IMG/VR virus record: IMGVR_UViG_3300046703_000335
Coordinates: 1-64,000 of that record
DNA: 64,000 bases
Direction: 5' to 3' (one strand)
Of this stretch, positions 47,538-63,873 are shown piece by piece. The position numbers and the translations under genes are program-made. The notes under the pieces were generated by a model. That model saw nothing but the letters and a program-made list of their open reading frames with translations, was not told where the DNA came from and searched no databases. Each line of letters opens with the position of its first letter. Position 1 is the first letter of the stretch.

Positions 47538-48197
47538 TTACGATATAAGAAAATCCCAACCTTTAACAAGCCATTCTACATAAAGATCATCTTGTTTACC
47601 ATACCAACCACAAGCATAGGGGGAATTAGCTTCTACCAAAGCCATTTCTCCAGAATCCAACAATCCGAAATCCACTGCTCCACAATAACCTTTAGGAATA
47701 TCTATATCTAATTCGGGAGCATCTGGAGTATTTAGCTCATCACCAGAATACCATTCTCCTGTTAGAATCTTTCCATCAGCGATATAGTATCTCCACTCAT
47801 TTATAAAGGTAACGATATCTGAACACCAATAGGGGCCTCGTTTTTTCTTTCTATAGCCCCCTACTGTAATAAAACCATTAAATCTTTTATGACGATCTGC
47901 TGGCTTAATAAATACGCCCCTATTTTGGGGCCATAAAGTCGATTTCCATACTTTTCTATAAAGGTGGTCTTTTAAAAAATCAGGATAATAATCTGGTATA
48001 GTCTTTTCACTGGGTAAGAACTTTTCGCACCAATCCACCCGACCAGAAGGAATATATCCTTCTGGTCTATCTCCCAGTCTATTACAAAGTTTATAGGGGA
48101 TCCTTTTTAAGATACAGTAGCTTATGATGGCTTTCTCTTCATTAGCACAGGAACCATAAACTAAATGTGATTGTAATGCAAATCCTTTAATATCCAT
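47538..48197 (-). CDS. ATP-grasp (R2K/DUF4343-like) protein
   Basis: VFIKPA..KRF.G, EWRYYI..G.I, AVDFG......ALVEAN..Y. Confidence 0.75.
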   Translation of the reverse strand: MDIKGFALQSHLVYGSCANEEKAIISYCILKRIPYKLCNRLGDRPEGYIPSGRVDWCEKFLPSEKTIPDYYPDFLKDHLYRKVWKSTLWPQNRGVFIKPADRHKRFNGFITVGGYRKKKRGPYWCSDIVTFINEWRYYIADGKILTGEWYSGDELNTPDAPELDIDIPKGYCGAVDFGLLDSGEMALVEANSPYACGWYGKQDDLYVEWLVKGWDFLIS

Positions 48198-48261
48198 TTT
48201 TCAAAAAATCCCTAATAATGTGGACTACCCGCTCACTCTATTTTTTAAGGGGAGCATGCCT

Positions 48262-48744
48262 TCATAGTTCGATTACCCATATATCTGGATACTTTAATAA
48301 GACACCGGTAATCTCTGGAAATTCATTTATCAAAAGAGGGATATCGATAAGTTTTCCAGTATATACCGAACGAATCAACATACCAAGTGTTCTAATCTTA
48401 TTTTTTACAACATCATCCCATTTACTTGAATAGTACTCATACTCTTTTTCTGAAAAAAGAGCATCAGATATATGAATCTTATAGATACTATCTATCATAG
48501 TCACTACTCTATTAATACCTGAAGATTGTTGACATTGATTAGTCATGAAAGATCTTGAAGTACTAATATTTAGTGATCTTATAGTGTCTATTCTGTCCAT
48601 AGTACTTAATGCAGAATAATCAAAAAATTTAAGCTCAGCATGCTTTTTCAGAATATTATATATTTTAAATTCTGTTAAATGAGGACTATTCTGCCCAAAT
48701 ACTAAGGCTACCGCATGGTAGTTAAACTCATCATTGTTATCCAT
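48262..48744 (-). CDS. Hypothetical protein
   Basis: ORF. Confidence 0.5.
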   Translation of the reverse strand: MDNNDEFNYHAVALVFGQNSPHLTEFKIYNILKKHAELKFFDYSALSTMDRIDTIRSLNISTSRSFMTNQCQQSSGINRVVTMIDSIYKIHISDALFSEKEYEYYSSKWDDVVKNKIRTLGMLIRSVYTGKLIDIPLLINEFPEITGVLLKYPDIWVIEL

Positions 48745-48751
48745 GCTATAC

Positions 48752-49003
48752 CTACTTTAATTCCAGGTACATTTTATTACACGTAGCACAATAAGAAGCA
48801 GGTACATTTCCACCTTTAAATCCCCAATTTCTTAAAAGATTTTCAATCTTCATTACTCTTTTTCCACCACAAAGAGCTTCACGGGAATATTCTCCTGAAA
48901 CAGATAGATAATAGTGCCACATACCACTCATACTATCCACAACTTTTAATAAATGTTTTTTTTGATTCTTCTGTTTCATCTTTTTTTCTTTCGTTTCATG
49001 CAT
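48752..49003 (-). CDS. Small Zn-binding hypothetical protein
   Basis: ALCG...CATC. Confidence 0.45.
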   Translation of the reverse strand: MHETKEKKMKQKNQKKHLLKVVDSMSGMWHYYLSVSGEYSREALCGGKRVMKIENLLRNWGFKGGNVPASYCATCNKMYLELK

Positions 49004-49263
49004 ATCCCAAAATTTTTTTGCTTTCTAACCCATTTAACCCATTTTTGGACACTCGGTTGAGATCTAAGCAGATTTATATTATAGTAGAGATCTCTCAGCT
49101 CATTATTAGTAAAAAGCATGTGAATTTGATCTCCACAATCGATGCAAACCAGCTCAGTATCCCTACCTCCCTTTGCTACCGGAGTAGTATGATGTTTTTC
49201 CTGATAACGTGTATCTGGGATCTCTCTACCGCACAGGGAACAGTATATTTCTTCTTTACGCAT
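48976..49263 (-). CDS. Small HNH endonuclease
   Basis: CSLC, HHTTP..KGG, C..C..QIH. Confidence 0.75.
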   Translation of the reverse strand: MRKEEIYCSLCGREIPDTRYQEKHHTTPVAKGGRDTELVCIDCGDQIHMLFTNNELRDLYYNINLLRSQPSVQKWVKWVRKQKNFGICMKRKKKR

Positions 49264-49266
49264 AAA

Positions 49267-49440
49267 TCATTTAGGGATATCTTCAACTTTTTTATACCAG
49301 AATTCAAACCCCGTGACTTGAAGACCATGCTCTCTAGCTATTTCGATCAGATCATCCTCTGTGGCATCATCTTCAACTTCCATTTCCTCTGTATCAGCTT
49401 CGCTCATACCATTACATCGAGCACCAACGATTATTTTCAA
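49267..49440 (-). CDS. Small acidic phage protein, 57 aa, TTG start
   Basis: SD AGGAG then TTG AAA ATA...; MKIIVGARCNGMSEADTEE...WYKKVEDIPK. Confidence 0.55.
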   Translation of the reverse strand: MKIIVGARCNGMSEADTEEMEVEDDATEDDLIEIAREHGLQVTGFEFWYKKVEDIPK

Positions 49441-49539
49441 GATTTTTTCTCCTAAAAAATATAAATGAGTACATCTATAATTAATATACTGTTATAAAAC
49501 ATGGGACAAAAGTGCTATCTATAAAATACTGAGGATTTA

Positions 49540-50172
49540 TTACGAGAGATTAAGAGTCTTCTTAATACCTATCTGATAGTTATCTATGATCCAATCAAAC
49601 TGACCTCGATAGATATTTAAGAATGCATCGATAGCAATGCGCGGGTGAGTGAATCGTAACTTTGGGTTATCTTTATTAAATTCTGCATGACTTATGTAGT
49701 GCCATGGATCTGTGGTCTCCATTTCATAATCATCAATAAGCATTATCCCACCAACTTTTAAAAGTTTCCAGGATAATATCAAATCCTCAAGGAGATTACA
49801 GGCATTATGATCCCCATCCACATAAATAAAATCAAATCTAAAGATATTATCCTTTATAAGATCGATAAGAACTTTTCCGGAAGGTTCCCTATAAAATATA
49901 ATGTCTCCTAAATGCTGTCTTAGGTTATATTCTCCATTTTTAGCGATATAAGGATCAATACAATGTAACATCCCCTTACTTCTGTGGATACTTTCAATAC
50001 TTAAGATATTATCAATCAACCAACAGGAAGTTCTTCCCTCAAAAACTCCTATTTCTAAGAAATTCAACTGAGATTCTTCTGTATTACTAAAAAGCTGTTT
50101 GATATACGCAAAATTAGTATGATGATCGGCATTCCAAAAATTTATTTTTTTTGTAAACTTATACTTATTCAT
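49540..50172 (-). CDS. Class I SAM-dependent methyltransferase
   Basis: FLEIGVFEG, FDFIYVDGDH, LKVGGIMLIDDY. Confidence 0.85.
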   Translation of the reverse strand: MNKYKFTKKINFWNADHHTNFAYIKQLFSNTEESQLNFLEIGVFEGRTSCWLIDNILSIESIHRSKGMLHCIDPYIAKNGEYNLRQHLGDIIFYREPSGKVLIDLIKDNIFRFDFIYVDGDHNACNLLEDLILSWKLLKVGGIMLIDDYEMETTDPWHYISHAEFNKDNPKLRFTHPRIAIDAFLNIYRGQFDWIIDNYQIGIKKTLNLS

Positions 50173-50647
50173 TTATTATAAATTCTCTCATTTTTGGTAA
50201 GTATTTAATTACAAAGGTATCTGTATAGTACCATTTATCTTGAAGACACCTAAGCATATAAATACTTACTTTAAATGTATAAAAATTATAAGTGTCAAGT
50301 ATCGAATCCAATAGAAACTGATGAGTCTGAGAAACTTTACAAATATCTAACTCAATTAGTCTATCTCGAGTCCAACTTATTAAGTGCTCAGATTTAAACT
50401 TATTTGCTAATGTCAGAAACATCGTCTTATCTTCAGCTAATAATTCGTATTCATCATCTTTATACATATTAGAATACATATAGAGATACCATCGATATGT
50501 CCCGGGAACCAGATCCGGAGGAATATACCCTGGAACGTTATCATCCAATGAGCAATTCAGGTGATCAACTGATAATGCTAATAATCTATTTAAATATTCT
50601 GGATTAATCATTTCCACAGCCCTTAGGCTTGTATATGCCTTTTTCAC
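50165..50647 (-). CDS. Hypothetical protein
   Basis: ORF. Confidence 0.5.
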   Translation of the reverse strand: MKKAYTSLRAVEMINPEYLNRLLALSVDHLNCSLDDNVPGYIPPDLVPGTYRWYLYMYSNMYKDDEYELLAEDKTMFLTLANKFKSEHLISWTRDRLIELDICKVSQTHQFLLDSILDTYNFYTFKVSIYMLRCLQDKWYYTDTFVIKYLPKMREFIINE

Positions 50648-51479
50648 GAACTATTTTGTCATAATAATATACTGCGGGGACTCCTACTACTTCTACTCCA
50701 GTTTTAGTACGCTTGACAGTAGAATTATGGTTAAATTCATTCCTGGCTATATTACCTATTATTTTCATATCCTCAAAGCATGCAAAGACATTCCCACCTA
50801 AAGTATGCCCCCCAATAAGTATGGTCTTATATCCTCGAGTGCATGTACAAAAATCATTACACTTTTTATATTCAAAGTCTACAAGATACCAATCTTCTCC
50901 ATCATAATCCTTGACTTCATGGAAATCCTTGCCACGATCATACCCTTTAAAATCCTGAATCTTAAAAGGTATACCAAATGCCTTCCATTTACGTTTATTT
51001 TCTTTTATTACTTCCTTATCATTATGCACCAGTAGCTCTTTAACATATACGGGGACGCCATTATCATGAAGGAAGTGTACGTTGTCTTCGTACATTTTTA
51101 CTAAACTTGGAATATGACCCATCATTTTTCGATGAAAAGTAAATCCTACACGGTGTATCCTATCTTTATAGGGTAATAACCGTGCATAATTTTCACGACT
51201 CTGAAGGCCATTTGTGAGAAAATCAAAGCGTTCTATTGAAGTCGATCGAATAACTGTGCAGATAGTATTAATATTTGTGGAGATGAAAGGCTCACCACCG
51301 TGAAAATGCATCAAAATATCTTCAGCGGGTAAAAGATGTGTGTCCCTGAATAGTTTATATTGGTCAATTGAGAAAGATTGATGCTTTGTGTAATTAGAAT
51401 AGAAACGTTCATGATGGAAGCAATAACTGCAACGGAGATTACAGTCAAAAAAAATTGGGTATGCAATAAATAGCTTCAA
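50604..51479 (-). CDS. Radical SAM protein
   Basis: CNLRCSYC, FHGGEP, TNG; C-terminal Cys cluster. Confidence 0.85.
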   Translation of the reverse strand: MKLFIAYPIFFDCNLRCSYCFHHERFYSNYTKHQSFSIDQYKLFRDTHLLPAEDILMHFHGGEPFISTNINTICTVIRSTSIERFDFLTNGLQSRENYARLLPYKDRIHRVGFTFHRKMMGHIPSLVKMYEDNVHFLHDNGVPVYVKELLVHNDKEVIKENKRKWKAFGIPFKIQDFKGYDRGKDFHEVKDYDGEDWYLVDFEYKKCNDFCTCTRGYKTILIGGHTLGGNVFACFEDMKIIGNIARNEFNHNSTVKRTKTGVEVVGVPAVYYYDKIVREKGIYKPKGCGND

Positions 51480-51520
51480 AGTATATTATCTTTTATTTAT
51501 ATTATATGTTAATTTACAAA

Positions 51521-51921
51521 TGGAGGAGAGGGGAGTTGAACCCCTGTGTCAAGTATGATCCCTATTAATCTCTACATGCTTAGTTTAATTTGCACTACCC
51601 CTCTGTAAATATCAATTAAACAAAATTTTTAACAGAGTGCATTAAGTAATTTCGGTCCCCTTCTCTATTATGCTTTTCGGGTACCCTACTTCGTGATCTT
51701 TTAAGAGATCGGATCCCACGATTGTCCGATACTCTTTGCTACCTTTAATTAGGCAGCGATTGAGCTTGCAACACCTAAACTGATATTATCAGCAAAGGCG
51801 AGAGCAAACTTAACAGCATAATCTTTTGCAATTATACTTTAACGGATGATTTACGAGGCCAACCGTTATCCTCAACATGCAATTAATACTTCACCTACCT
51901 GATCGAAACCAGTACTCCCCC
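51521..51921 (-). ncRNA. ssrA: tmRNA with tag (A)AKDYAVKFALAFADNISLGVASSIAA*
   Basis: 5' GGGGGAGUACUGGUUUCGAUC; 3' GGGUUCAACUCCC-CUCCUCCA; G3:U70 pair; AUAAUU-GCA resume context; tag ORF 51749..51829. Confidence 0.93.
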
Positions 51922-52017
51922 AAAACGTTCAAAGAACACTTTTAATATACATTCATGAAAAACAGGACGCCCAATTATTTATAAATTAACTTCCTAATAG
52001 AATGTTAATTCCCTGCT

Positions 52018-52112
52018 TCTCTCAACCCATACCCGCGTGTATGTGACACACTTATGGATCTTTTTATAAATACTACATTCAATCGGTACATCCCCGCGTG
52101 TATGTGGCACAC
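52018..52112 (-). CRISPR. Degenerate two-repeat I-C-like mini-array or paired direct repeats
   Basis: GTCACATAC-ACGCGG-GTATGGGTTGAG and GCCACATAC-ACGCGG-GGATGTACCGATTGAAT, 61 nt apart with an ~28-nt spacer; no cas genes in the window. Confidence 0.4.
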
Positions 52113-52148
52113 ACCAACCTATGGTATAGTTATTCTGTAAAAACATAT

Positions 52149-52327
52149 ATGCAATGTGTTTTACTCTCACACAAATAATGGTGCGCCCAATATGTCAATG
52201 AGCATGTGTCTTATATACGCGAGACATTTCACGCTTCAACACCCCAGTTACCCGGCAGCTCAGCGCGCCCACCCCGGCAAACCTGCCGGTGAGTGTATTT
52301 ATCTATGCAACACATTAAGTGCTGCAT
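52149..52327 (-). ncRNA. Unassigned structured RNA, about 180 nt
   Basis: GC-rich island; outer helices AATGTGTT/AACACATT and TACACTCAC/GTGAGAGTA; hairpins CCGGCA-GGTT-TGCCGG and CCGG-GTAA-CTGG; TGAGC/GCTCA helix. Confidence 0.5.
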
Positions 52328-52390
52328 TAATGGCTATATCATTTGTAGATTTTCATTTCAGACATGTAATCTTATGTGTAATCCCGATAT

Positions 52391-53029
52391 TTAATTAACT
52401 CTACATATTTTAAAGTCCTTCAAGCTTATAAGATAATTTTCTTTTACACCAGTATCAACAAATCTTATTAAAGATTCTGTACCGACAATTACAGCCAAAA
52501 GTGCAGTATTGCGTGCAAGGGGATACTCACAAACATCTATCCCTGTACCTTTTTTAGGTACACGATATCTCTCGTTCCAGGTAACTTCTGCGCAATCCTC
52601 TGATAAGCCTATGTGCATACAATCGATCTTATTAACTAAGCAATGATCCATAACTATTTTACGACTCTCCGGATTATCAAAGCCATCAATTACTATCGAA
52701 TCAGCTTTTAAAAATTTTCGAACATTGGAAGCCTCAAGTTTTTTATCGATAGGATCTATAGTAACTTTCATAACATTGAAGAGATGTGACCGGATAGCTG
52801 CAACTTTCAGTTGACCTACATCCCGACTATTCCAAATTTGAGTATTTCGGTTATGTTCCTCTACTCTATCAAAATCGATTACAGTCATTCTCTGAAAACC
52901 CTGACGTACCAGATTATCTGCGAGGTTCGAACCGATCGCACCTACCCCGCATAACGTGATATGCTGTGCAGCTATCTTCTTTAAAAGATCTTCCCCACGG
53001 TAAGCTCCCTCATGTACAAAAGTTTTCAT
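52391..53029 (-). CDS. ThiF/E1-like ubiquitin-like-protein activating enzyme (ORF extends to 53065; likely start 53029)
   Basis: CGVGAIG, IDFDRVEEHN..TQ, GQLK, IDGFDN, DVCEYPLARN. Confidence 0.9.
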   Translation of the reverse strand: MKTFVHEGAYRGEDLLKKIAAQHITLCGVGAIGSNLADNLVRQGFQRMTVIDFDRVEEHNRNTQIWNSRDVGQLKVAAIRSHLFNVMKVTIDPIDKKLEASNVRKFLKADSIVIDGFDNPESRKIVMDHCLVNKIDCMHIGLSEDCAEVTWNERYRVPKKGTGIDVCEYPLARNTALLAVIVGTESLIRFVDTGVKENYLISLKDFKICRVN

Positions 53030-53598
53030 TATCTCACCTTTTTTATATTTTCTATGACATTGCATGCAATTAAAAAATCACTAAGATAATCCAAGTTATA
53101 CCTTGAAACTGCATATGTGGTCCCATTATTGTCTTGTTTTAATAATACTACCCAATGACTGAATGTCAATTCCATCCCAGGCAGAGCAGAGATATAGGGT
53201 CCCGATATAACATCCTGTTCCCAATTTGAATTTTCTTTCAATATCTTAAGAGTATGATGAATGAGATTCAGCCATTTTCTTTCCTCAAGAAGATCTTCCA
53301 AAAAAACATGAGGGTATCCTTCCCAATCATCAATAGGCTCCAATTCATATACAAAAAAGTCAGTCTCATATCCTGTTCGGGGTATTCTAACAGTATTGCT
53401 TATAGCTCGATTACCAGACAGCATTTCATTGTAAATATTACGAATTTTAGGATGCCATTCCTTGTTTATATACAAAGGCAATTCCAATTTTTGTAAGTTA
53501 CTCAGAAAGTATAAATCTTCCACCATCTGGTAACTATTAATTCTCGTCAGATGTCTTGTTAAATTTTCAAAATCTATACTATGAGAATATGTAAACAT
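53029..53598 (-). CDS. Hypothetical protein
   Basis: TAATG-coupled to the ThiF gene. Confidence 0.55.
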   Translation of the reverse strand: MFTYSHSIDFENLTRHLTRINSYQMVEDLYFLSNLQKLELPLYINKEWHPKIRNIYNEMLSGNRAISNTVRIPRTGYETDFFVYELEPIDDWEGYPHVFLEDLLEERKWLNLIHHTLKILKENSNWEQDVISGPYISALPGMELTFSHWVVLLKQDNNGTTYAVSRYNLDYLSDFLIACNVIENIKKVR

Positions 53599-53604
53599 AT
53601 AAAA

Positions 53605-54225
53605 CTATCCCTGACAGATATTATCTCTTCTTTTTAAATTTTTTGCTGTCCCACTATTTTCTCTGCCCTGACGAACCCAAGCGATATCATGTATTGATGC
53701 AAGCGTCATAGCATTATCTCGTTCTTCATCACTTTTAAATCCATAAACTGTGTTATGGTTACCAACATTATTTCTGGGCTTATCAAACATATGATACACT
53801 GTTACGTTCTGATAGTTTTTCAGGAATTCTTGTGCCAAAGTATCAGTACCCCGTGCATCCCCAACTATAAAAGAATAATTACCTGCTATCACATTCTCTA
53901 TCATAGGCTGATAGTGCTCTTTAAATTCATCAGTAGTTAAGTCTAAATGACCCGATATAAAATAGGTATGTTCTCTACTTTTTTCTTTTTCAAGCCACAA
54001 AAGATCTTCTTTGGAAATCACTTCATCAAATAAAAACTGTGATCGATCTCCATAATCGATAACTCTACCATCCCGGGAACGACAACCTATAAGATTATTA
54101 CTGTCCCATCCAGGGCATTTATCTATAAATGCATATAGACCTTTCAATGTGGGAGGATTAATCTCTGGCATATCCTCCCAAGGAGTCACCACTGCATCAT
54201 TAATAACTTTTCGATGTCGTATCAT
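53605..54225 (-). CDS. Protein with C-terminal SLOG/DprA-like Rossmann domain
   Basis: FISGH, IVGDARGTD.LAQ, RD..M. Confidence 0.6.
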   Translation of the reverse strand: MIRHRKVINDAVVTPWEDMPEINPPTLKGLYAFIDKCPGWDSNNLIGCRSRDGRVIDYGDRSQFLFDEVISKEDLLWLEKEKSREHTYFISGHLDLTTDEFKEHYQPMIENVIAGNYSFIVGDARGTDTLAQEFLKNYQNVTVYHMFDKPRNNVGNHNTVYGFKSDEERDNAMTLASIHDIAWVRQGRENSGTAKNLKRRDNICQG

Positions 54226-54314
54226 TTTTACTCCAATACAAAAAAGCTAATGAATGCAAATTTCTATAGTTCATTCTACTATTTAATATACTATTTTAAA
54301 ATTAGCTATACAAT

Positions 54315-54350
54315 AAAAAAGAAAGGGGAAGACTTTTCCCGGTCTTCCCC
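54315..54350 (-). terminator. Rho-independent terminator downstream of the tRNA-mimic RNAs
   Basis: 9-bp stem GGGGAAGAC/GTCTTCCCC plus U-tract. Confidence 0.85.
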
Positions 54351-54397
54351 CTCAAATTATATCTCACCCGAGAGTTGTAATCTCAGGATTAGATAGT

Positions 54398-54560
54398 GAT
54401 GGTCAATAAATAATACCCTCGCCCTTTATAATAAGTCTCCCACTCTACCGCTGAGCTATAGACCCCCGAAGTTATCTATTACAAAATAACTTAGAGGGTC
54501 TAAATGGATTTGAACCACTGACAGGAGTGTTTTAAGGCTACCTATTCTTTATTAACCACC
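54398..54560 (-). ncRNA. YrlA-like Y RNA 2 (circularly permuted tRNA mimic)
   Basis: Order T arm (AGTGG-TTCAAAT-CCATT), acceptor TAGACCC/GGGTCTA closed by a hairpin, D arm (GCTC-AGCGGTA-GAGT); 13-bp terminal stem GGTGGTTAATAAA/TTTATTGACCATC; no anticodon loop. Confidence 0.75.
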
Positions 54561-54624
54561 TTCAATTTTGAATCTTGGACATTCAAAACACTAATCATCA
54601 ACTTAAATCTGGTATGCAAAAAAA

Positions 54625-54755
54625 TAAAAATAATCTTTTGCCTTTTACAGAAGTACTCTACCAAACTGAGCTACCTTCTCCATATTTTTTAGGGGAGAAG
54701 GAGAGGAATCGAACCTCCGCGTCTTCTGATATAGAAAAAGACAAAAGTGCTTTTA
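54625..54755 (-). ncRNA. YrlA-like Y RNA 1 (circularly permuted tRNA mimic, His-like acceptor)
   Basis: T arm GGAGG-TTCGATT-CCTCT, acceptor CCTTCTC-C/G-GAGAAGG closed by a short linker, D arm GCTC-AGTTTGGTA-GAGT; ends pair (CTTCTG/CAGAAG, then CTTTTGTCTTTT/AAAAGGCAAAAG). Confidence 0.75.
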
Positions 54756-54776
54756 GGATAATTAACCTACTCGGGG

Positions 54777-55550
54777 CTAATTAACTTTAAACCCCTGATT
54801 AATATAATTAAAAAATTTCAGTCCAACTTTTGCTGACTCAGTTTCCTGAGCATTTGCTTTTGACCGGGCGATCTTCACACCAGAGATCAGGCAATCAATA
54901 CGATTGAGCAACTGACTCTTCTGTTTTGGAGATAAACCTCCACTAGCGTAGGTTTGTGTCCAAGTTCCAACTGCTTCATCCGACATAACAATCTCAGTTT
55001 GTGCTTGAAACTTATCAGTAGCTTCAGCCTTGGTAATAACCTTTGGAATTTTCTTTGTTCTGATACGTTCTATTGGTTCAGATTTCCATACCCCTGTTCG
55101 AGTTACATCATCTGACCAAACCTTTGAGGGATCAATTGTAGGAATCTCTTCATAGACCTTCCTAACTCTTTCCAGAGCGGATTCCATCTGTACCAGAAAT
55201 GTTACAGGGGCCTTTTCAAGAATAATCTCTGTAGTGCCATCAGGAAGCTCTACAACGACATCCGCAGAGGCACTCTGATTACCACGTTCTTTCTGAAGTT
55301 CAATATCAATAAAACGAACTATCGATGCTTGAGAATAATCAAGTTTATCCTTAACTGTTGTGACCATAGGAGTAAACTCTTCATCAGGGCGATCCTTATC
55401 CTGGTCATTGAAAGGAGAATAACTCTTACGTGATTCAATGAAGTGTGCCGAGCGCTGATTGAATGTTTTAAGAGTTTCATCAATAATCTTGGCAAAGACA
55501 TCCTTTGCATCTTTTTCTACTGCAAGAAGCTCATACAATTTACCACCCAT
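54777..55550 (-). CDS. Conserved helical hypothetical protein directly upstream of the Y RNAs
   Basis: SD GGAGG; KL.ELLAVEK N-terminus, coiled-coil ends. Confidence 0.7.
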   Translation of the reverse strand: MGGKLYELLAVEKDAKDVFAKIIDETLKTFNQRSAHFIESRKSYSPFNDQDKDRPDEEFTPMVTTVKDKLDYSQASIVRFIDIELQKERGNQSASADVVVELPDGTTEIILEKAPVTFLVQMESALERVRKVYEEIPTIDPSKVWSDDVTRTGVWKSEPIERIRTKKIPKVITKAEATDKFQAQTEIVMSDEAVGTWTQTYASGGLSPKQKSQLLNRIDCLISGVKIARSKANAQETESAKVGLKFFNYINQGFKVN

Positions 55551-55656
55551 TAAAAACCTCCTGAGAATATTATGTATATTTTATCTATCTAATAGGATAT
55601 CTAAAGGATATTATTAAATATAATTAAAACTCTAAGGTAATAACATATAAAAATAA

Positions 55657-55686
55657 AAAAGAGTCCTGCTTTGGCGGGACTCTTTT
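55657..55686. terminator. Bidirectional-type intrinsic terminator
   Basis: AAAAGAGTCCTGC-TTTG-GCGGGACTCTTTT. Confidence 0.8.
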
Positions 55687-55710
55687 GAAAAAGCATATAA
55701 ACATCAAATC

Positions 55711-56904
55711 TTATCTCTGAGCAGTATTATTCTTACCTGCCATTCCCATATTAATACCGAGATCCATAGCTGTCTTAGCATTCAGCATATTAATGAGATC
55801 AGTTGCTCCATTTGCACCTTTACTATTTTCACCCATAATAACAGAAGGAACCCAGTTACCTTTATATTCAGAGATAGCTTTAGCATAATTAGCGTTAACT
55901 TCTTTATAAGCCTCTAATTTTTTATCCAAAGCACCATCAGCTGTCATAACAAGTTTCTTACGTTCAGCCTCTCCCTGCCCCAGAAGAATCTGTTCTGCTT
56001 TCTTAAATTCAGCAGCCTCTTTGTTAAGTTTAGCAACCTCTTTTTCTTGCTCCCCAAGAGTGACTGCGCGCGCCTTGACAACTTCCTGTTCCCAGCGACT
56101 TCTTGCAGCATTAGCCTCCCCCTGCTTTGCAACAGTAATTGCATTCTGTTCTGCTTTTTTAGCATCGGCTATTGAAGTTTGAACATCCATAGTAATCTGC
56201 TGTTGACTCTGAATTTGCTTTTCAATTGCCCCATCATAAGGGAGGGCATTAATCGCGAAGTTAAATGTTTTTATGCCAAAAATAGCCATAGCAGCATCTT
56301 CTTGACGTTCAGGCACTCCATTTTTCATTATTATATCAACTACAGTTACGGTTTTTTCAGCGCCAGTCATTTGGTCTATAGTCTTTGCTTCCTTAGAAAC
56401 AGTTCGGTACACACCATTTTGAATCTGATCCTCTACATACTGAATAAGATAGTTTCTTTTTTCGGCATATGACTCTTTGGAAGACATAAGTGGTCCAGTC
56501 ATATAAATGGCTTTATTTACTACTGTTGCTACTAACTGATTTTCAAGAGCTTGGATGCTACCAAATTTTGAATGAATATTAGAAAGATTAATGGGATCCA
56601 CAGGTAATTCATAACTTACACTGCCGTCCATTGTTCCATGTCCACCATCATTAAATCTTACTTGAGTTTTAAAGGAGTATATTTCTCTTTTAGGGTACTT
56701 AGATACCTTACCAAAACCTTGCCATTTTACACCGGCAGTTACATGCCAGGTAAGCTTACCAGAAATCGGACTTTGAACTACTAAGATCTGATTAGCATTA
56801 TTGACCTCAACAAATTGAAAAATTGACCACAAGCCTATTATGCATATGATCCCCCCAACGATTAATTTAAAAACTCCAGCAGGACTTTCCTGGGCTCTTG
56901 CCAT
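55711..56904 (-). CDS. SPFH/Band-7 (prohibitin-like) membrane protein
   Basis: N-terminal TM, SPFH core, Ala/Glu-rich coiled-coil. Confidence 0.85.
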   Translation of the reverse strand: MARAQESPAGVFKLIVGGIICIIGLWSIFQFVEVNNANQILVVQSPISGKLTWHVTAGVKWQGFGKVSKYPKREIYSFKTQVRFNDGGHGTMDGSVSYELPVDPINLSNIHSKFGSIQALENQLVATVVNKAIYMTGPLMSSKESYAEKRNYLIQYVEDQIQNGVYRTVSKEAKTIDQMTGAEKTVTVVDIIMKNGVPERQEDAAMAIFGIKTFNFAINALPYDGAIEKQIQSQQQITMDVQTSIADAKKAEQNAITVAKQGEANAARSRWEQEVVKARAVTLGEQEKEVAKLNKEAAEFKKAEQILLGQGEAERKKLVMTADGALDKKLEAYKEVNANYAKAISEYKGNWVPSVIMGENSKGANGATDLINMLNAKTAMDLGINMGMAGKNNTAQR

Positions 56905-63432: not shown

Positions 63433-63508
63433 TGGCTTCTAATGATGGACTTGAACCATCGACGCATTTCTTATAAGGAAATTGCCCTACCAACTGGGCT
63501 AATTAGAA
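63433..63508 (-). tRNA. tRNA-Ile(UAU), CCA encoded
   Basis: TTCTAAT/ATTAGAA acceptor, GCCC D stem, ATTTC-CT TAT AA-GAAAT, GATGG-TTCAAGT-CCATC, G73-CCA. Confidence 0.88.
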
Positions 63509-63798: not shown

Positions 63799-63873
63799 TG
63801 CTAGTCTGAGGGATTTGAACCCCCTACCTATTGATTAGAAGTCAATTGCTCTACCAAATGAGCTAATGTAAGC
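63799..63873 (-). pseudogene. Pseudo-tRNA-Arg(UCU) with disrupted acceptor stem
   Basis: Intact D, anticodon (ATTGA-CT TCT AA-TCAAT) and T arms; 5' GCTTACAT pairs only 4/8 with AGACTAGC. Confidence 0.7.

What the first reader, a model, noticed from the sequence alone, without database searches (positions are those of the whole stretch)
52149..52327. Unassigned ~180-nt multi-branch structured RNA between E1 and tmRNA
Seen: a GC-rich non-coding island with nested long-range helices, a perfect CCGGCA/TGCCGG hairpin and a GNRA-capped CCGG-GUAA-CUGG hairpin; the G:U pair favours the minus strand. It does not match the RNase P, SRP, 6S, TPP or hammerhead cores I can recall. It could be a new phage ncRNA class, or a further Ro ligand.
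Basis: partly seen in the sequence, partly recalled or inferred. Interest (0 to 1): 0.6.

Follow-up and report, generated by a model that had tools for sequence, protein, structure and literature searches.

The report
Orphan phage CRISPR guide-scaffold (tracrRNA-like) RNA
The GC-rich island is a real, conserved structured RNA, but not a new RNA class or a Ro ligand: it is the tracrRNA-like scaffold of a miniature TnpB-derived CRISPR system carried by phages, left here beside a one-spacer mini-array where the nuclease gene has been lost.

Summary
No Rfam family matches. Relatives were found in 13 other phage or metagenome loci (17 scaffold copies in all, counting the window). In most of them the order on one strand is: a roughly 400-aa TnpB-family gene, then this scaffold, then a CRISPR array with 29-nt repeats of the type I-E form.

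The scaffold has a 5-6 bp hairpin, a three-tier stem capped by a tetraloop (GUAA here), and a 21-22 nt anti-repeat.
- **Covariation:** it is strong. 12 of 20 pairs show double changes, 90% of cells are paired against 27-44% in slid controls, and 0 of 500 shuffles reach the observed values.
- **Anti-repeat:** it pairs best with its own locus's repeat.
- **Hairpin loop:** it pairs with the repeat's 3' tail, giving a pseudoknot as in Cas12/TnpB guide RNAs.

In the window the scaffold (52205-52291) is followed by a leader and a mini-array of two repeats and one spacer (52023-52112). Upstream, only the last 25 codons of the nuclease gene remain, and an in-frame stop interrupts them.

So this is an orphan guide module. 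It may work in trans with a nuclease encoded in the unsequenced 55% of the genome, or it may be a relic. It is a new member of a known kind. No Ro gene is present.

The parts
52299..52376 (-). Remnant of the 3' end of a TnpB-family nuclease gene: 25 codons plus the stop codon at 52301->52299. It retains the RuvC-III motif D..NAA.N, and an in-frame stop at 52355->52353 replaces a zinc-finger Cys.
   Evidence: Translation. tblastn with P0020: 65% identity over 26 aa, E 0.003. The same codons end the intact genes of L153 and G006.
52205..52291 (-). Conserved scaffold RNA (tracrRNA-like). The 5' border is at CACCGG, where orphan copies in other loci also begin. It contains the four parts listed next.
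   Evidence: CM R1: 94.8 bits, E about 4e-35, the only copy in G000. Alignment A2 of 17 copies. Covariation.
52274..52289 (-). Hairpin A: 5-6 bp stem, with loop GGUU(U) at 52283->52279. The loop is proposed to pair with the 3' tail of the CRISPR repeat (pseudoknot).
   Evidence: Stem invariant except one pair that shows C-G/G-C/U-A. Loop-to-tail pairing is 4-5 of 5 in 13 loci, with a double compensatory change in L153a.
52230..52267 (-). Three-tier stem. B: 52267->52262 with 52235->52230. C: 52260->52257 with 52243->52240. D: 52255->52252 with 52247->52244, capped by GUAA at 52251->52248.
   Evidence: 11 of these 14 pairs show changes on both sides. U.G and G.U pairs favour this strand: 93.8% paired in sense, 82.4% in antisense. 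Variants 52254, 52257 and 52258 in peat contigs keep the pairing.
52207..52228 (-). Anti-repeat, complementary to the first 22 nt of the adjacent repeat.
   Evidence: RNAduplex -17.7 kcal/mol here. Across 13 loci the cognate mean is -28.7 against -20.5 for non-cognate pairs, and the cognate repeat ranks first in 8 of 13.
52193..52198 (-). Conserved TTGACA (part of UCUUUGAYA) just 3' of the anti-repeat. It is a possible -35 box of the array promoter, with a TAT-type -10 box 15-17 nt further on. This is inferred only.
   Evidence: Conserved in nearly all loci. The simple promoter scan did not call it in the window.
52113..52192 (-). CRISPR leader. It is AT-rich and ends in a leader-repeat junction motif of the (A/G)TTGG type, shared with relatives.
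   Evidence: Comparison of loci. 78% identity to the orphan module L153b over 269 nt.
52084..52112 (-). CRISPR repeat 1 (29 nt, type I-E form).
   Evidence: Direct repeat family with 61-nt period. Found only here in G000. Homologous to the array repeats of L133 and L150-L163.
52052..52083 (-). Single 32-nt spacer. Its target was not found.
   Evidence: No second copy in G000, no significant match in the phage collection, and none in viral contigs for its first 22 nt.
52023..52051 (-). CRISPR repeat 2, the terminal repeat, degenerate at its 3' end.

Best explanation
The element is the trans-activating (tracrRNA-like) half of a split omega-RNA. It belongs to a family of miniature, phage-borne, TnpB-derived CRISPR systems (type V-U / 'TranC'-like). 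It is read from the minus strand, from about 52291 to about 52205. It folds into hairpin A and a three-tier stem capped by a GUAA tetraloop, and ends in a 21-22 nt anti-repeat. The adjacent mini-array (repeat, 32-nt spacer, repeat; 52112->52023) supplies a crRNA. The anti-repeat pairs with the first 22 nt of the 29-nt repeat, and the loop of hairpin A pairs with the repeat's last bases next to the spacer, forming the pseudoknot typical of TnpB/Cas12 guide RNAs. A roughly 400-aa TnpB-family protein would bind this two-RNA scaffold and be guided to DNA matching the spacer. In this phage the nuclease gene that normally precedes the scaffold has been lost; only 25 terminal codons with an in-frame stop remain. 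The module is therefore an orphan. It can act only in trans, with a nuclease encoded in the unsequenced 55% of the genome or by a co-infecting relative, or else it is a recent relic. Shown here: homology, structure, strand, repeat/anti-repeat match, synteny in relatives, loss of the gene here. Inferred: transcription, ends of the RNA, protein binding, activity.
For: (1) A homologue in the complete 35-kb phage G006 lies between a 405-aa ORF with TnpB/Cas12f Pfam domains and an 8-repeat array. (2) Nine further loci that encode relatives of that protein (43-92% identical) show the same order of gene, scaffold, array. (3) Covariation on 17 copies: 90.3% of cells paired against 27-44% when partners are slid; 12 of 20 pairs with double changes; 0 of 500 shuffles as high. 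RNAalifold independently predicts the same helices. (4) Strand: 93.8% paired in sense against 82.4% in antisense. (5) The anti-repeat pairs over 21-22 bp in all 13 loci and prefers its cognate repeat. The loop-to-tail pseudoknot forms 4-5 of 5 pairs, with a double compensatory change in L153a; such a pseudoknot with the repeat 3' end is described as general for Cas12 tracrRNAs (bioRxiv 10.1101/2025.01.20.633832). (6) The window copy scores 94.8 bits, within the range of gene-linked copies (76.7-104.2 bits). (7) Orphan modules with long, homogeneous arrays exist elsewhere. L165 carries at least 3 repeats and lies on the same 15-kb contig as the gene-linked module L159. L160 has no nuclease gene within 6-9 kb. 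This shows that orphan modules are maintained. (8) The effector proteins are TnpB family (NCBIfam NF040570 above its cut-off; nearest solved natural protein ISDra2 TnpB, E 9e-18).
Against: No cognate nuclease gene lies in the 210 kb held. The only TnpB (85038-86243) is about 25% identical to the family and has no such scaffold. The window's repeat/anti-repeat duplex is the weakest of the 13 (-17.7 kcal/mol) and its anti-repeat would pair better with L153b's repeat. There is only one spacer, the second repeat is degenerate, and no protospacer was found. No RNA run holds the locus, so expression is unknown. No sigma-70 promoter or intrinsic terminator was called on the minus strand. No member of this particular family has been tested experimentally, as far as the papers searched show.
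Confidence: 0.8

Rival explanations
1. Same origin, but dead: the module is a decaying relic of a deleted TnpB-CRISPR locus and no longer does anything in this phage.
For: The nuclease gene is reduced to 25 codons with an in-frame stop. The repeat/anti-repeat match is the weakest of 13 loci. There is one spacer and a degenerate terminal repeat. No cognate nuclease lies in 210 kb.
Against: In the window copy 19 of the 20 model pairs form, the exception being the outermost pair of stem C (A.G), and the CM score lies within the range of gene-linked copies. Orphan modules with long, uniform arrays are kept in other phages, one of them on the same contig as a nuclease gene. Only 45% of the genome is held.
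Confidence: 0.3
2. Orphan anti-repeat RNA acting on foreign CRISPR RNAs. It could be a decoy that soaks up a rival phage's nuclease. Or, because the repeats have the type I-E form, it could be an RNA that pairs with host I-E repeats and blocks or hijacks their crRNAs.
For: The repeats share the 5' GTGTTCCCC and 3' GCGGGGAT-AACCG ends and the 29-nt length of a published Salmonella type I-E repeat. The scaffold stands without a nuclease gene. Related nuclease-bearing phages occur in the same peat samples.
Against: Nothing here tests it. The module keeps its own leader, repeats and spacer, which a pure decoy would not need. The host and its CRISPR type are unknown.
Confidence: 0.07
3. The conserved block is only a CRISPR leader, working as DNA (promoter and integration signals), not as an RNA.
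For: It lies directly upstream of the array on the array's strand. A conserved TTGACA and a conserved leader-repeat junction are present.
Against: Compensatory double changes occur in 12 of 20 pairs, and G.U pairs make the two strands unequal. The anti-repeat co-varies with the repeat. In many relatives the scaffold overlaps the end of the nuclease ORF, as omega-RNAs do. Fused, single-guide-like copies exist in L167.
Confidence: 0.03
4. A new phage ncRNA class, or a Y-RNA-like Ro ligand.
For: No Rfam match.
Against: No TROVE/Ro60 gene in the record. The RNA is consistently linked to TnpB-family genes and CRISPR arrays in relatives.
Confidence: 0.01

Closest known systems
tracrRNAs of TnpB-derived type V systems: 'TranC' transposon-CRISPR intermediates (Jin et al., Cell 2025, as cited in PMC13565253 and bioRxiv 10.64898/2026.03.27.714800) and the V-U* branches of PMC10691335
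   Same: A roughly 400-aa TnpB-like effector with the array downstream of the gene. The scaffold RNA lies between the gene and the array, with an anti-repeat at its 3' end. There are no cas1, cas2 or cas4 genes. Phage carriage is also reported for CauTranC9.
   Different: Repeats here are 29 nt and of type I-E form, whereas the described TranC clades have 32-38 bp repeats. I could not map the family to a numbered clade. The window copy has no effector gene. Many members have Asn in place of the RuvC-I Asp. PMC10691335 reports a non-canonical RuvC-I site for V-U24, but I could not test identity with it because no supplement is held.
TnpB omega-RNA / reRNA (ISDra2 type)
   Same: The scaffold starts at or inside the 3' end of the nuclease ORF: many family ORFs read through hairpin A and end in ..PAGSPG. 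The guide lies 3' of the scaffold. ISDra2 TnpB is the nearest solved natural protein. Two copies in L167 are fused, single-RNA forms.
   Different: In the window the RNA is split: the guide comes from a separate repeat-spacer array about 90 nt downstream. No transposon ends or TnpA were examined.
Cas12f / Cas12n / Cas12p ('hacker') tracrRNA:crRNA scaffolds
   Same: A multi-stem tracrRNA, a long repeat:anti-repeat duplex, and a short pseudoknot with the repeat's 3' end. PADLOC Cas12f and Cas12u4 profiles match the effector.
   Different: The proteins are smaller, lack the expansions of those families, and fall under NCBIfam's TnpB model rather than its Cas12f models. There is no sequence similarity between the RNAs.
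Type I-E CRISPR arrays
   Same: A 29-nt repeat with the same conserved 5' and 3' ends as a published Salmonella I-E repeat, and 32-33 nt spacers.
   Different: No Cas1 or Cas6e-family match in G000. The arrays sit beside a TnpB-like gene and an anti-repeat RNA, which type I-E systems do not use.
Virus-borne orphan mini-CRISPR arrays and RNA anti-CRISPRs (solitary repeat units). This comparison rests on my own knowledge, not on a test here.
   Same: A phage carries a tiny array or repeat-related RNA without cas genes.
   Different: Here the orphan unit includes a structured anti-repeat scaffold, which is not a feature of those elements.

Membership tests
tracrRNA of a TnpB-derived type V (TranC / V-U) CRISPR system | Encoded beside a CRISPR array | tested here: met
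   Two 29-nt repeats with a 61-nt period lie 92 nt downstream on the same strand. Relatives have arrays of 2 to more than 12 repeats.
tracrRNA of a TnpB-derived type V (TranC / V-U) CRISPR system | Anti-repeat complementary to the repeat and co-evolving with it | tested here: met
   A 21-22 bp duplex in all 13 loci. Cognate mean -28.7 against non-cognate -20.5 kcal/mol, and the cognate ranks first in 8 of 13. The window is the weakest (-17.7, rank 5).
tracrRNA of a TnpB-derived type V (TranC / V-U) CRISPR system | Conserved secondary structure supported by covariation | tested here: met
tracrRNA of a TnpB-derived type V (TranC / V-U) CRISPR system | Pseudoknot between the scaffold and the 3' end of the repeat | tested here: inconclusive
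   4-5 of 5 pairs in 13 loci, and one locus with two compensatory changes. That makes only one informative lineage. The window forms 4 of 5, including one wobble.
tracrRNA of a TnpB-derived type V (TranC / V-U) CRISPR system | Cognate TnpB/Cas12 effector gene in the locus | tested here: not met
   Met in 11 relatives. In the window only a 25-codon remnant with a stop is left. The one TnpB in G000 is about 25% identical and unlinked. The genome is 45% complete.
tracrRNA of a TnpB-derived type V (TranC / V-U) CRISPR system | Expressed, bound by the effector, and required for targeting | not testable with these tools
   No RNA run holds the locus.
TnpB omega-RNA (unsplit) | Scaffold and guide in one RNA that overlaps the ORF's 3' end | tested here: not met
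   The overlap with the ORF end is seen in relatives, and fused forms occur in L167. In the window the guide comes from a separate array.
Type I-E CRISPR-Cas | Repeat of the I-E form | tested here: met
   Compared with a published Salmonella I-E repeat.
Type I-E CRISPR-Cas | Cascade, Cas3, Cas1 and Cas2 genes | tested here: not met
   No Cas1 or Cas6e-family match in G000. The Cas6e control matched only in Thermus, so its sensitivity is limited. The neighbouring genes are unrelated.
Ro60 ligand (Y RNA) | Ro/TROVE gene in the genome and a Y-RNA-like fold | tested here: not met
   No PF05731 match, although the controls did match. No Rfam Y_RNA match.
Any Rfam 15 family | Match at the gathering score | tested here: not met
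   Best matches are t44 at E = 3 and DUF2693 at E = 8.3.

The most novel reading that the evidence does not exclude
The scaffold's anti-repeat is tuned to repeats of the type I-E form. Orphan copies like this one might then act in trans on CRISPR transcripts that are not their own. They could load host or rival type I-E-form crRNAs into a phage TnpB-like protein. Or they could mask the repeat hairpin so that Cas6e cannot process it, which would be an RNA anti-CRISPR of a new kind. A related open point is that many effectors of the family carry Asn at the RuvC-I position, so the system may bind rather than cut.
Probability: 0.07. Interest if true: 0.85.

Novelty: new member of a known kind. Interest (0 to 1): 0.55.

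Why it matters
It turns an unassigned structured RNA into an annotated part, with borders, strand, helices and partner sequences. It also exposes an apparently uncharacterised family of roughly 400-aa, phage-borne, RNA-guided proteins with a scaffold of only about 90 nt.

The family shows, side by side, gene-linked split guides, orphan split guides and fused single guides (L167). That is the range of forms expected if CRISPR guide RNAs arose by splitting of transposon omega-RNAs.

The type I-E form of the repeats raises a testable question: do these phage systems borrow the adaptation or processing machinery, or the crRNAs, of host type I-E systems? For annotation, the covariance model could flag such modules, which Rfam currently misses.

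Tried and rejected
- **Rfam:** gathering and permissive scans gave no family.
- **Phage collection, blastn of the region:** no match.
- **Synteny through the ThiF/E1 and radical-SAM neighbours:** their relatives (L002-L006, L014) carry no such RNA.
- **First DNA patterns:** one was too strict and found nothing; one was too loose and gave 118 chance matches.
- **Bacterial and archaeal species genomes:** the 17 pattern matches score only 15-26 bits with the model and are chance matches in GC-rich genomes, so no host was identified. Four of the ten metagenome matches were likewise chance.
- **More distant TnpB loci (25-33% identity) and G000's own TnpB locus:** they lack the scaffold.
- **Spacer target:** none found.
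- **E. coli genome search with a family array:** no match. The type I-E comparison therefore rests on a repeat printed in PMC9201451.
- **Relatives of a virus record:** cannot be drawn. Records of the metagenome loci are not held.
- **Promoter and terminator scan:** nothing on the minus strand.
- **Plus-strand reading:** considered because one long-range helix and a T-run in a relative seemed to favour it. Rejected on the strand comparison.
- **Searches not run or limited:** the large representative protein search was not used. The word-based protein search used the first 277 residues of the G006 protein, so it saw only proteins of about 150-485 aa.

Full report
**Setting.** The window is the first 64 kb of a 210-kb IMG/VR virus record. 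CheckV rates it 45% complete, and it comes from peat metagenomes. Almost all genes lie on the minus strand. The finding lies between a ThiF/E1-family ORF (52391-53065, minus) and a tmRNA gene (51518-51921, minus).

- GC reaches 0.57 in the island, against 0.25-0.40 around it.
- The perfect 6-bp hairpin is at 52274-52289.
- The GUAA-capped hairpin is on the minus strand at 52255->52244.
- Rfam gives nothing at gathering score, and nothing better than E = 3 in a permissive scan.
- Folding of the single sequence is only mildly better than shuffles (z = -2.2 minus, -2.0 plus), so comparative data were needed.
- Two 24-29 nt direct repeats with a 61-nt period lie just downstream. They occur nowhere else in the genome.

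**First sign of a family.** I laid contigs of four peat runs on 51300-53100. Other contigs with unrelated flanks match only 52224-52292 and 52296-52341, at about 85-93% identity. They carry three substitutions (52254, 52257, 52258) that keep minus-strand pairing, through C-G to U.G and U.G to C-G changes. Searches through the neighbouring genes led nowhere.

**Homologues and their context.** A structure-informed DNA pattern found one homologue in IMG/VR, locus L133.
- There the conserved block lies directly beside an 8-repeat CRISPR array.
- The record (G006) is a complete 35-kb phage with 60-nt terminal repeats. Joining its ends shows a 405-aa ORF with TnpB/Cas12f domains that ends where the conserved block begins.
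- A word-based protein search with that ORF's first 277 residues gave 29 relatives of 43-92% identity, mostly about 400-430 aa.
- DNA was fetched for nine of them. All nine show the same order on one strand: gene, conserved block, about 40-130 nt of leader, then an array of 29-nt repeats.
- A second pattern scan added five metagenome loci.

**Structure.** I aligned 17 copies of 95 nt. They support four helices: hairpin A, and stems B, C and D, with D capped by a tetraloop.
- 90.3% of cells are paired, against 27-44% when the 3' partners are slid by 1-3 columns.
- 12 of 20 pairs have changes on both sides (52 cells), and none of 500 shuffles reaches any observed measure.
- RNAalifold predicts the same helices on its own, and 11 of its 17 pairs show compensatory changes.
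- G.U pairs make the strands unequal: 93.8% paired on the gene strand against 82.4% on the other.

**Anti-repeat and pseudoknot.**
- After stem B comes a short single-stranded GAAAU, then 21-22 nt that pair with the first 22 nt of the locus's own repeat, in all 13 loci that have an array.
- The mean duplex energy is -28.7 kcal/mol for cognate pairs and -20.5 for non-cognate pairs. The cognate repeat ranks first in 8 of 13 loci.
- The 5-nt loop of hairpin A is complementary to positions -6 to -2 of the repeat, next to the spacer, in 4-5 of 5 positions in all 13 loci.
- In L153a the loop changed from GGUUC to GAAUC while the repeat tail changed from GAACC to GAUUC, which is two compensatory pairs.
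- A pseudoknot between the tracrRNA and the 3' end of the repeat is described as a general trait of Cas12 guide RNAs (bioRxiv 10.1101/2025.01.20.633832).

**The proteins.**
- They fall under NCBIfam's RNA-guided TnpB model, above its cut-off. They match Cas12f and Cas12u4 profiles in PADLOC.
- Their nearest solved natural relative is ISDra2 TnpB (E 9e-18); LaTranC is a distant match.
- In many members the ORF reads through hairpin A and ends in ..PAGSPG. The scaffold thus overlaps the gene's 3' end, as omega-RNAs do.
- Most close members, including those of G006 and L153, have GINRG where other members have GID.G. That puts Asn at the RuvC-I catalytic position.

**The repeats.** They are 29 nt long. 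Their 5' end (GTGTTCCCC) and 3' end (GCGGGGAT-AACCG) are those of a Salmonella type I-E repeat printed in PMC9201451. G000 has no Cas1 or Cas6e-family match.

**The window copy.**
- A covariance model built from the 17 copies scores the window at 94.8 bits (E about 4e-35). Gene-linked copies score 76.7-104.2 bits. It finds one copy only in the 210 kb, and none in more distant TnpB loci.
- Upstream of the scaffold the minus strand reads HKITCLK*KSTNDIAINAALNVLHR*. This is the end of the nuclease gene, 65% identical to L153's protein over 26 aa, with a stop in place of a zinc-finger Cys.
Orphan copies elsewhere begin exactly at CACCGG with unrelated sequence before it, so the remnant is not part of the conserved RNA.
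- No cognate nuclease gene lies in the 210 kb held. The only TnpB (85038-86243) is about 25% identical.
- The window's repeat/anti-repeat duplex is the weakest of the set.
- The second repeat is degenerate, and the single spacer has no detectable target.

**Other orphan modules.**
- L153 carries a gene-linked module followed by a second, orphan module with its own array. That orphan is the window's closest relative (78% over 269 nt). The flanking genes of the two phages show no similarity.
- L165 is an orphan module with at least 3 repeats, on the same 15-kb contig as the gene-linked module L159.
- L160 has no nuclease gene within 6-9 kb.
- L167 has three scaffold copies around one gene. In two of them the anti-repeat is followed at once by its repeat, giving a fused, single-guide form.

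**Interpretation.** The element is a tracrRNA-like scaffold, one half of a split omega-RNA, from a phage-borne TnpB-derived CRISPR family. In the window it is an orphan with a mini-array.
- This is the architecture described for type V-U branches (PMC10691335) and for 'TranC' intermediates. One of these, CauTranC9, was also found in a Caudoviricetes genome.
- The described TranC clades have 32-38 bp repeats, so this family is probably a different or uncharacterised clade.
- PMC10691335 reports V-U24 as having a non-canonical RuvC-I site and an HTH-protein neighbour. Two loci here have weak HTH_11 neighbours. I could not test whether the family is V-U24, because no supplement is held.
- Whether the window copy is active, works with a nuclease encoded elsewhere, or is a relic remains open.
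- The Ro idea is rejected.

**Limits.**
- There are no expression data.
- RNA ends and the array promoter (a conserved TTGACA at 52198->52193) are inferred; the simple promoter scan did not call it.
- The pseudoknot rests on one informative lineage.
- The host is unknown. Pattern matches in species genomes were chance.

Noticed in passing
window 51518-51921 (-): Phage-encoded one-piece tmRNA (Rfam 133 bits). ARAGORN reads its tag peptide as AKDYAVKFALAFADNISLGVASSIAA. It lies about 100 nt downstream of the mini-array on the same strand.
   Followed up: partly
window 63433-63508 (-) and 63807-63866 (-): A tRNA-Ile with anticodon TAT, and a second tRNA-like match that only Rfam calls (model positions 7-64).
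   Followed up: no
window 47538-56904 (-): The neighbouring genes are: R2K ATP-grasp, a class I methyltransferase, a radical SAM protein, ThiF/E1 followed by two ORFs without Pfam matches (53029-53598, 53605-54225), DUF7873, and an SPFH/Band 7 protein. The E1 may belong to a ubiquitin-like conjugation set; this was not examined.
   Followed up: no
G000:C1:85038-86243 (-), outside the window (locus L137): An ordinary 401-aa TnpB with an intact GIDVG RuvC-I motif, about 25% identical to the CRISPR-linked family. It has no copy of the scaffold and no array nearby.
   Followed up: partly
Proteins P0001-P0015, P0020, and the G006 ORF (alignment A4): In most close family members the RuvC-I catalytic Asp is replaced by Asn (GINRG), while P0011, P0013, P0017, P0021, P0022, P0026, P0027 and P0029 keep Asp. 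The Glu and the third Asp are kept. These proteins may bind rather than cut, or may use an altered site.
   Followed up: partly
L167:1248-1420 and L167:3334-3470: In these scaffold copies the anti-repeat is followed at once by its repeat, giving a fused hairpin like a natural single-guide RNA, and then by a guide or a tiny degenerate array. Three scaffold copies surround one nuclease gene, and one of them lies upstream of it. L168 likewise has a copy upstream of the gene.
   Followed up: partly
L153:3989-5540: Two tandem modules, each with its own scaffold and its own repeat variant (tails ..GATGATTCG and ..GATAAACCG). The hairpin-A loop differs between them to match. This suggests module duplication followed by co-evolution of loop and repeat.
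   Followed up: partly
All family loci, 5-12 nt after the anti-repeat (window 52193-52201, -): A conserved UCUUUGAYA is followed after 8-11 nt by a conserved G-rich ..TACC motif and a TAT-type box. It looks like a sigma-70 promoter for the array, but it could instead be part of the RNA.
   Followed up: no
L136:12960-15131 (-) in G006: The large terminase subunit of the 35-kb phage carries Hint/intein domain matches in its C-terminal part (from residue 374), so an intein appears to be inserted in TerL.
   Followed up: no
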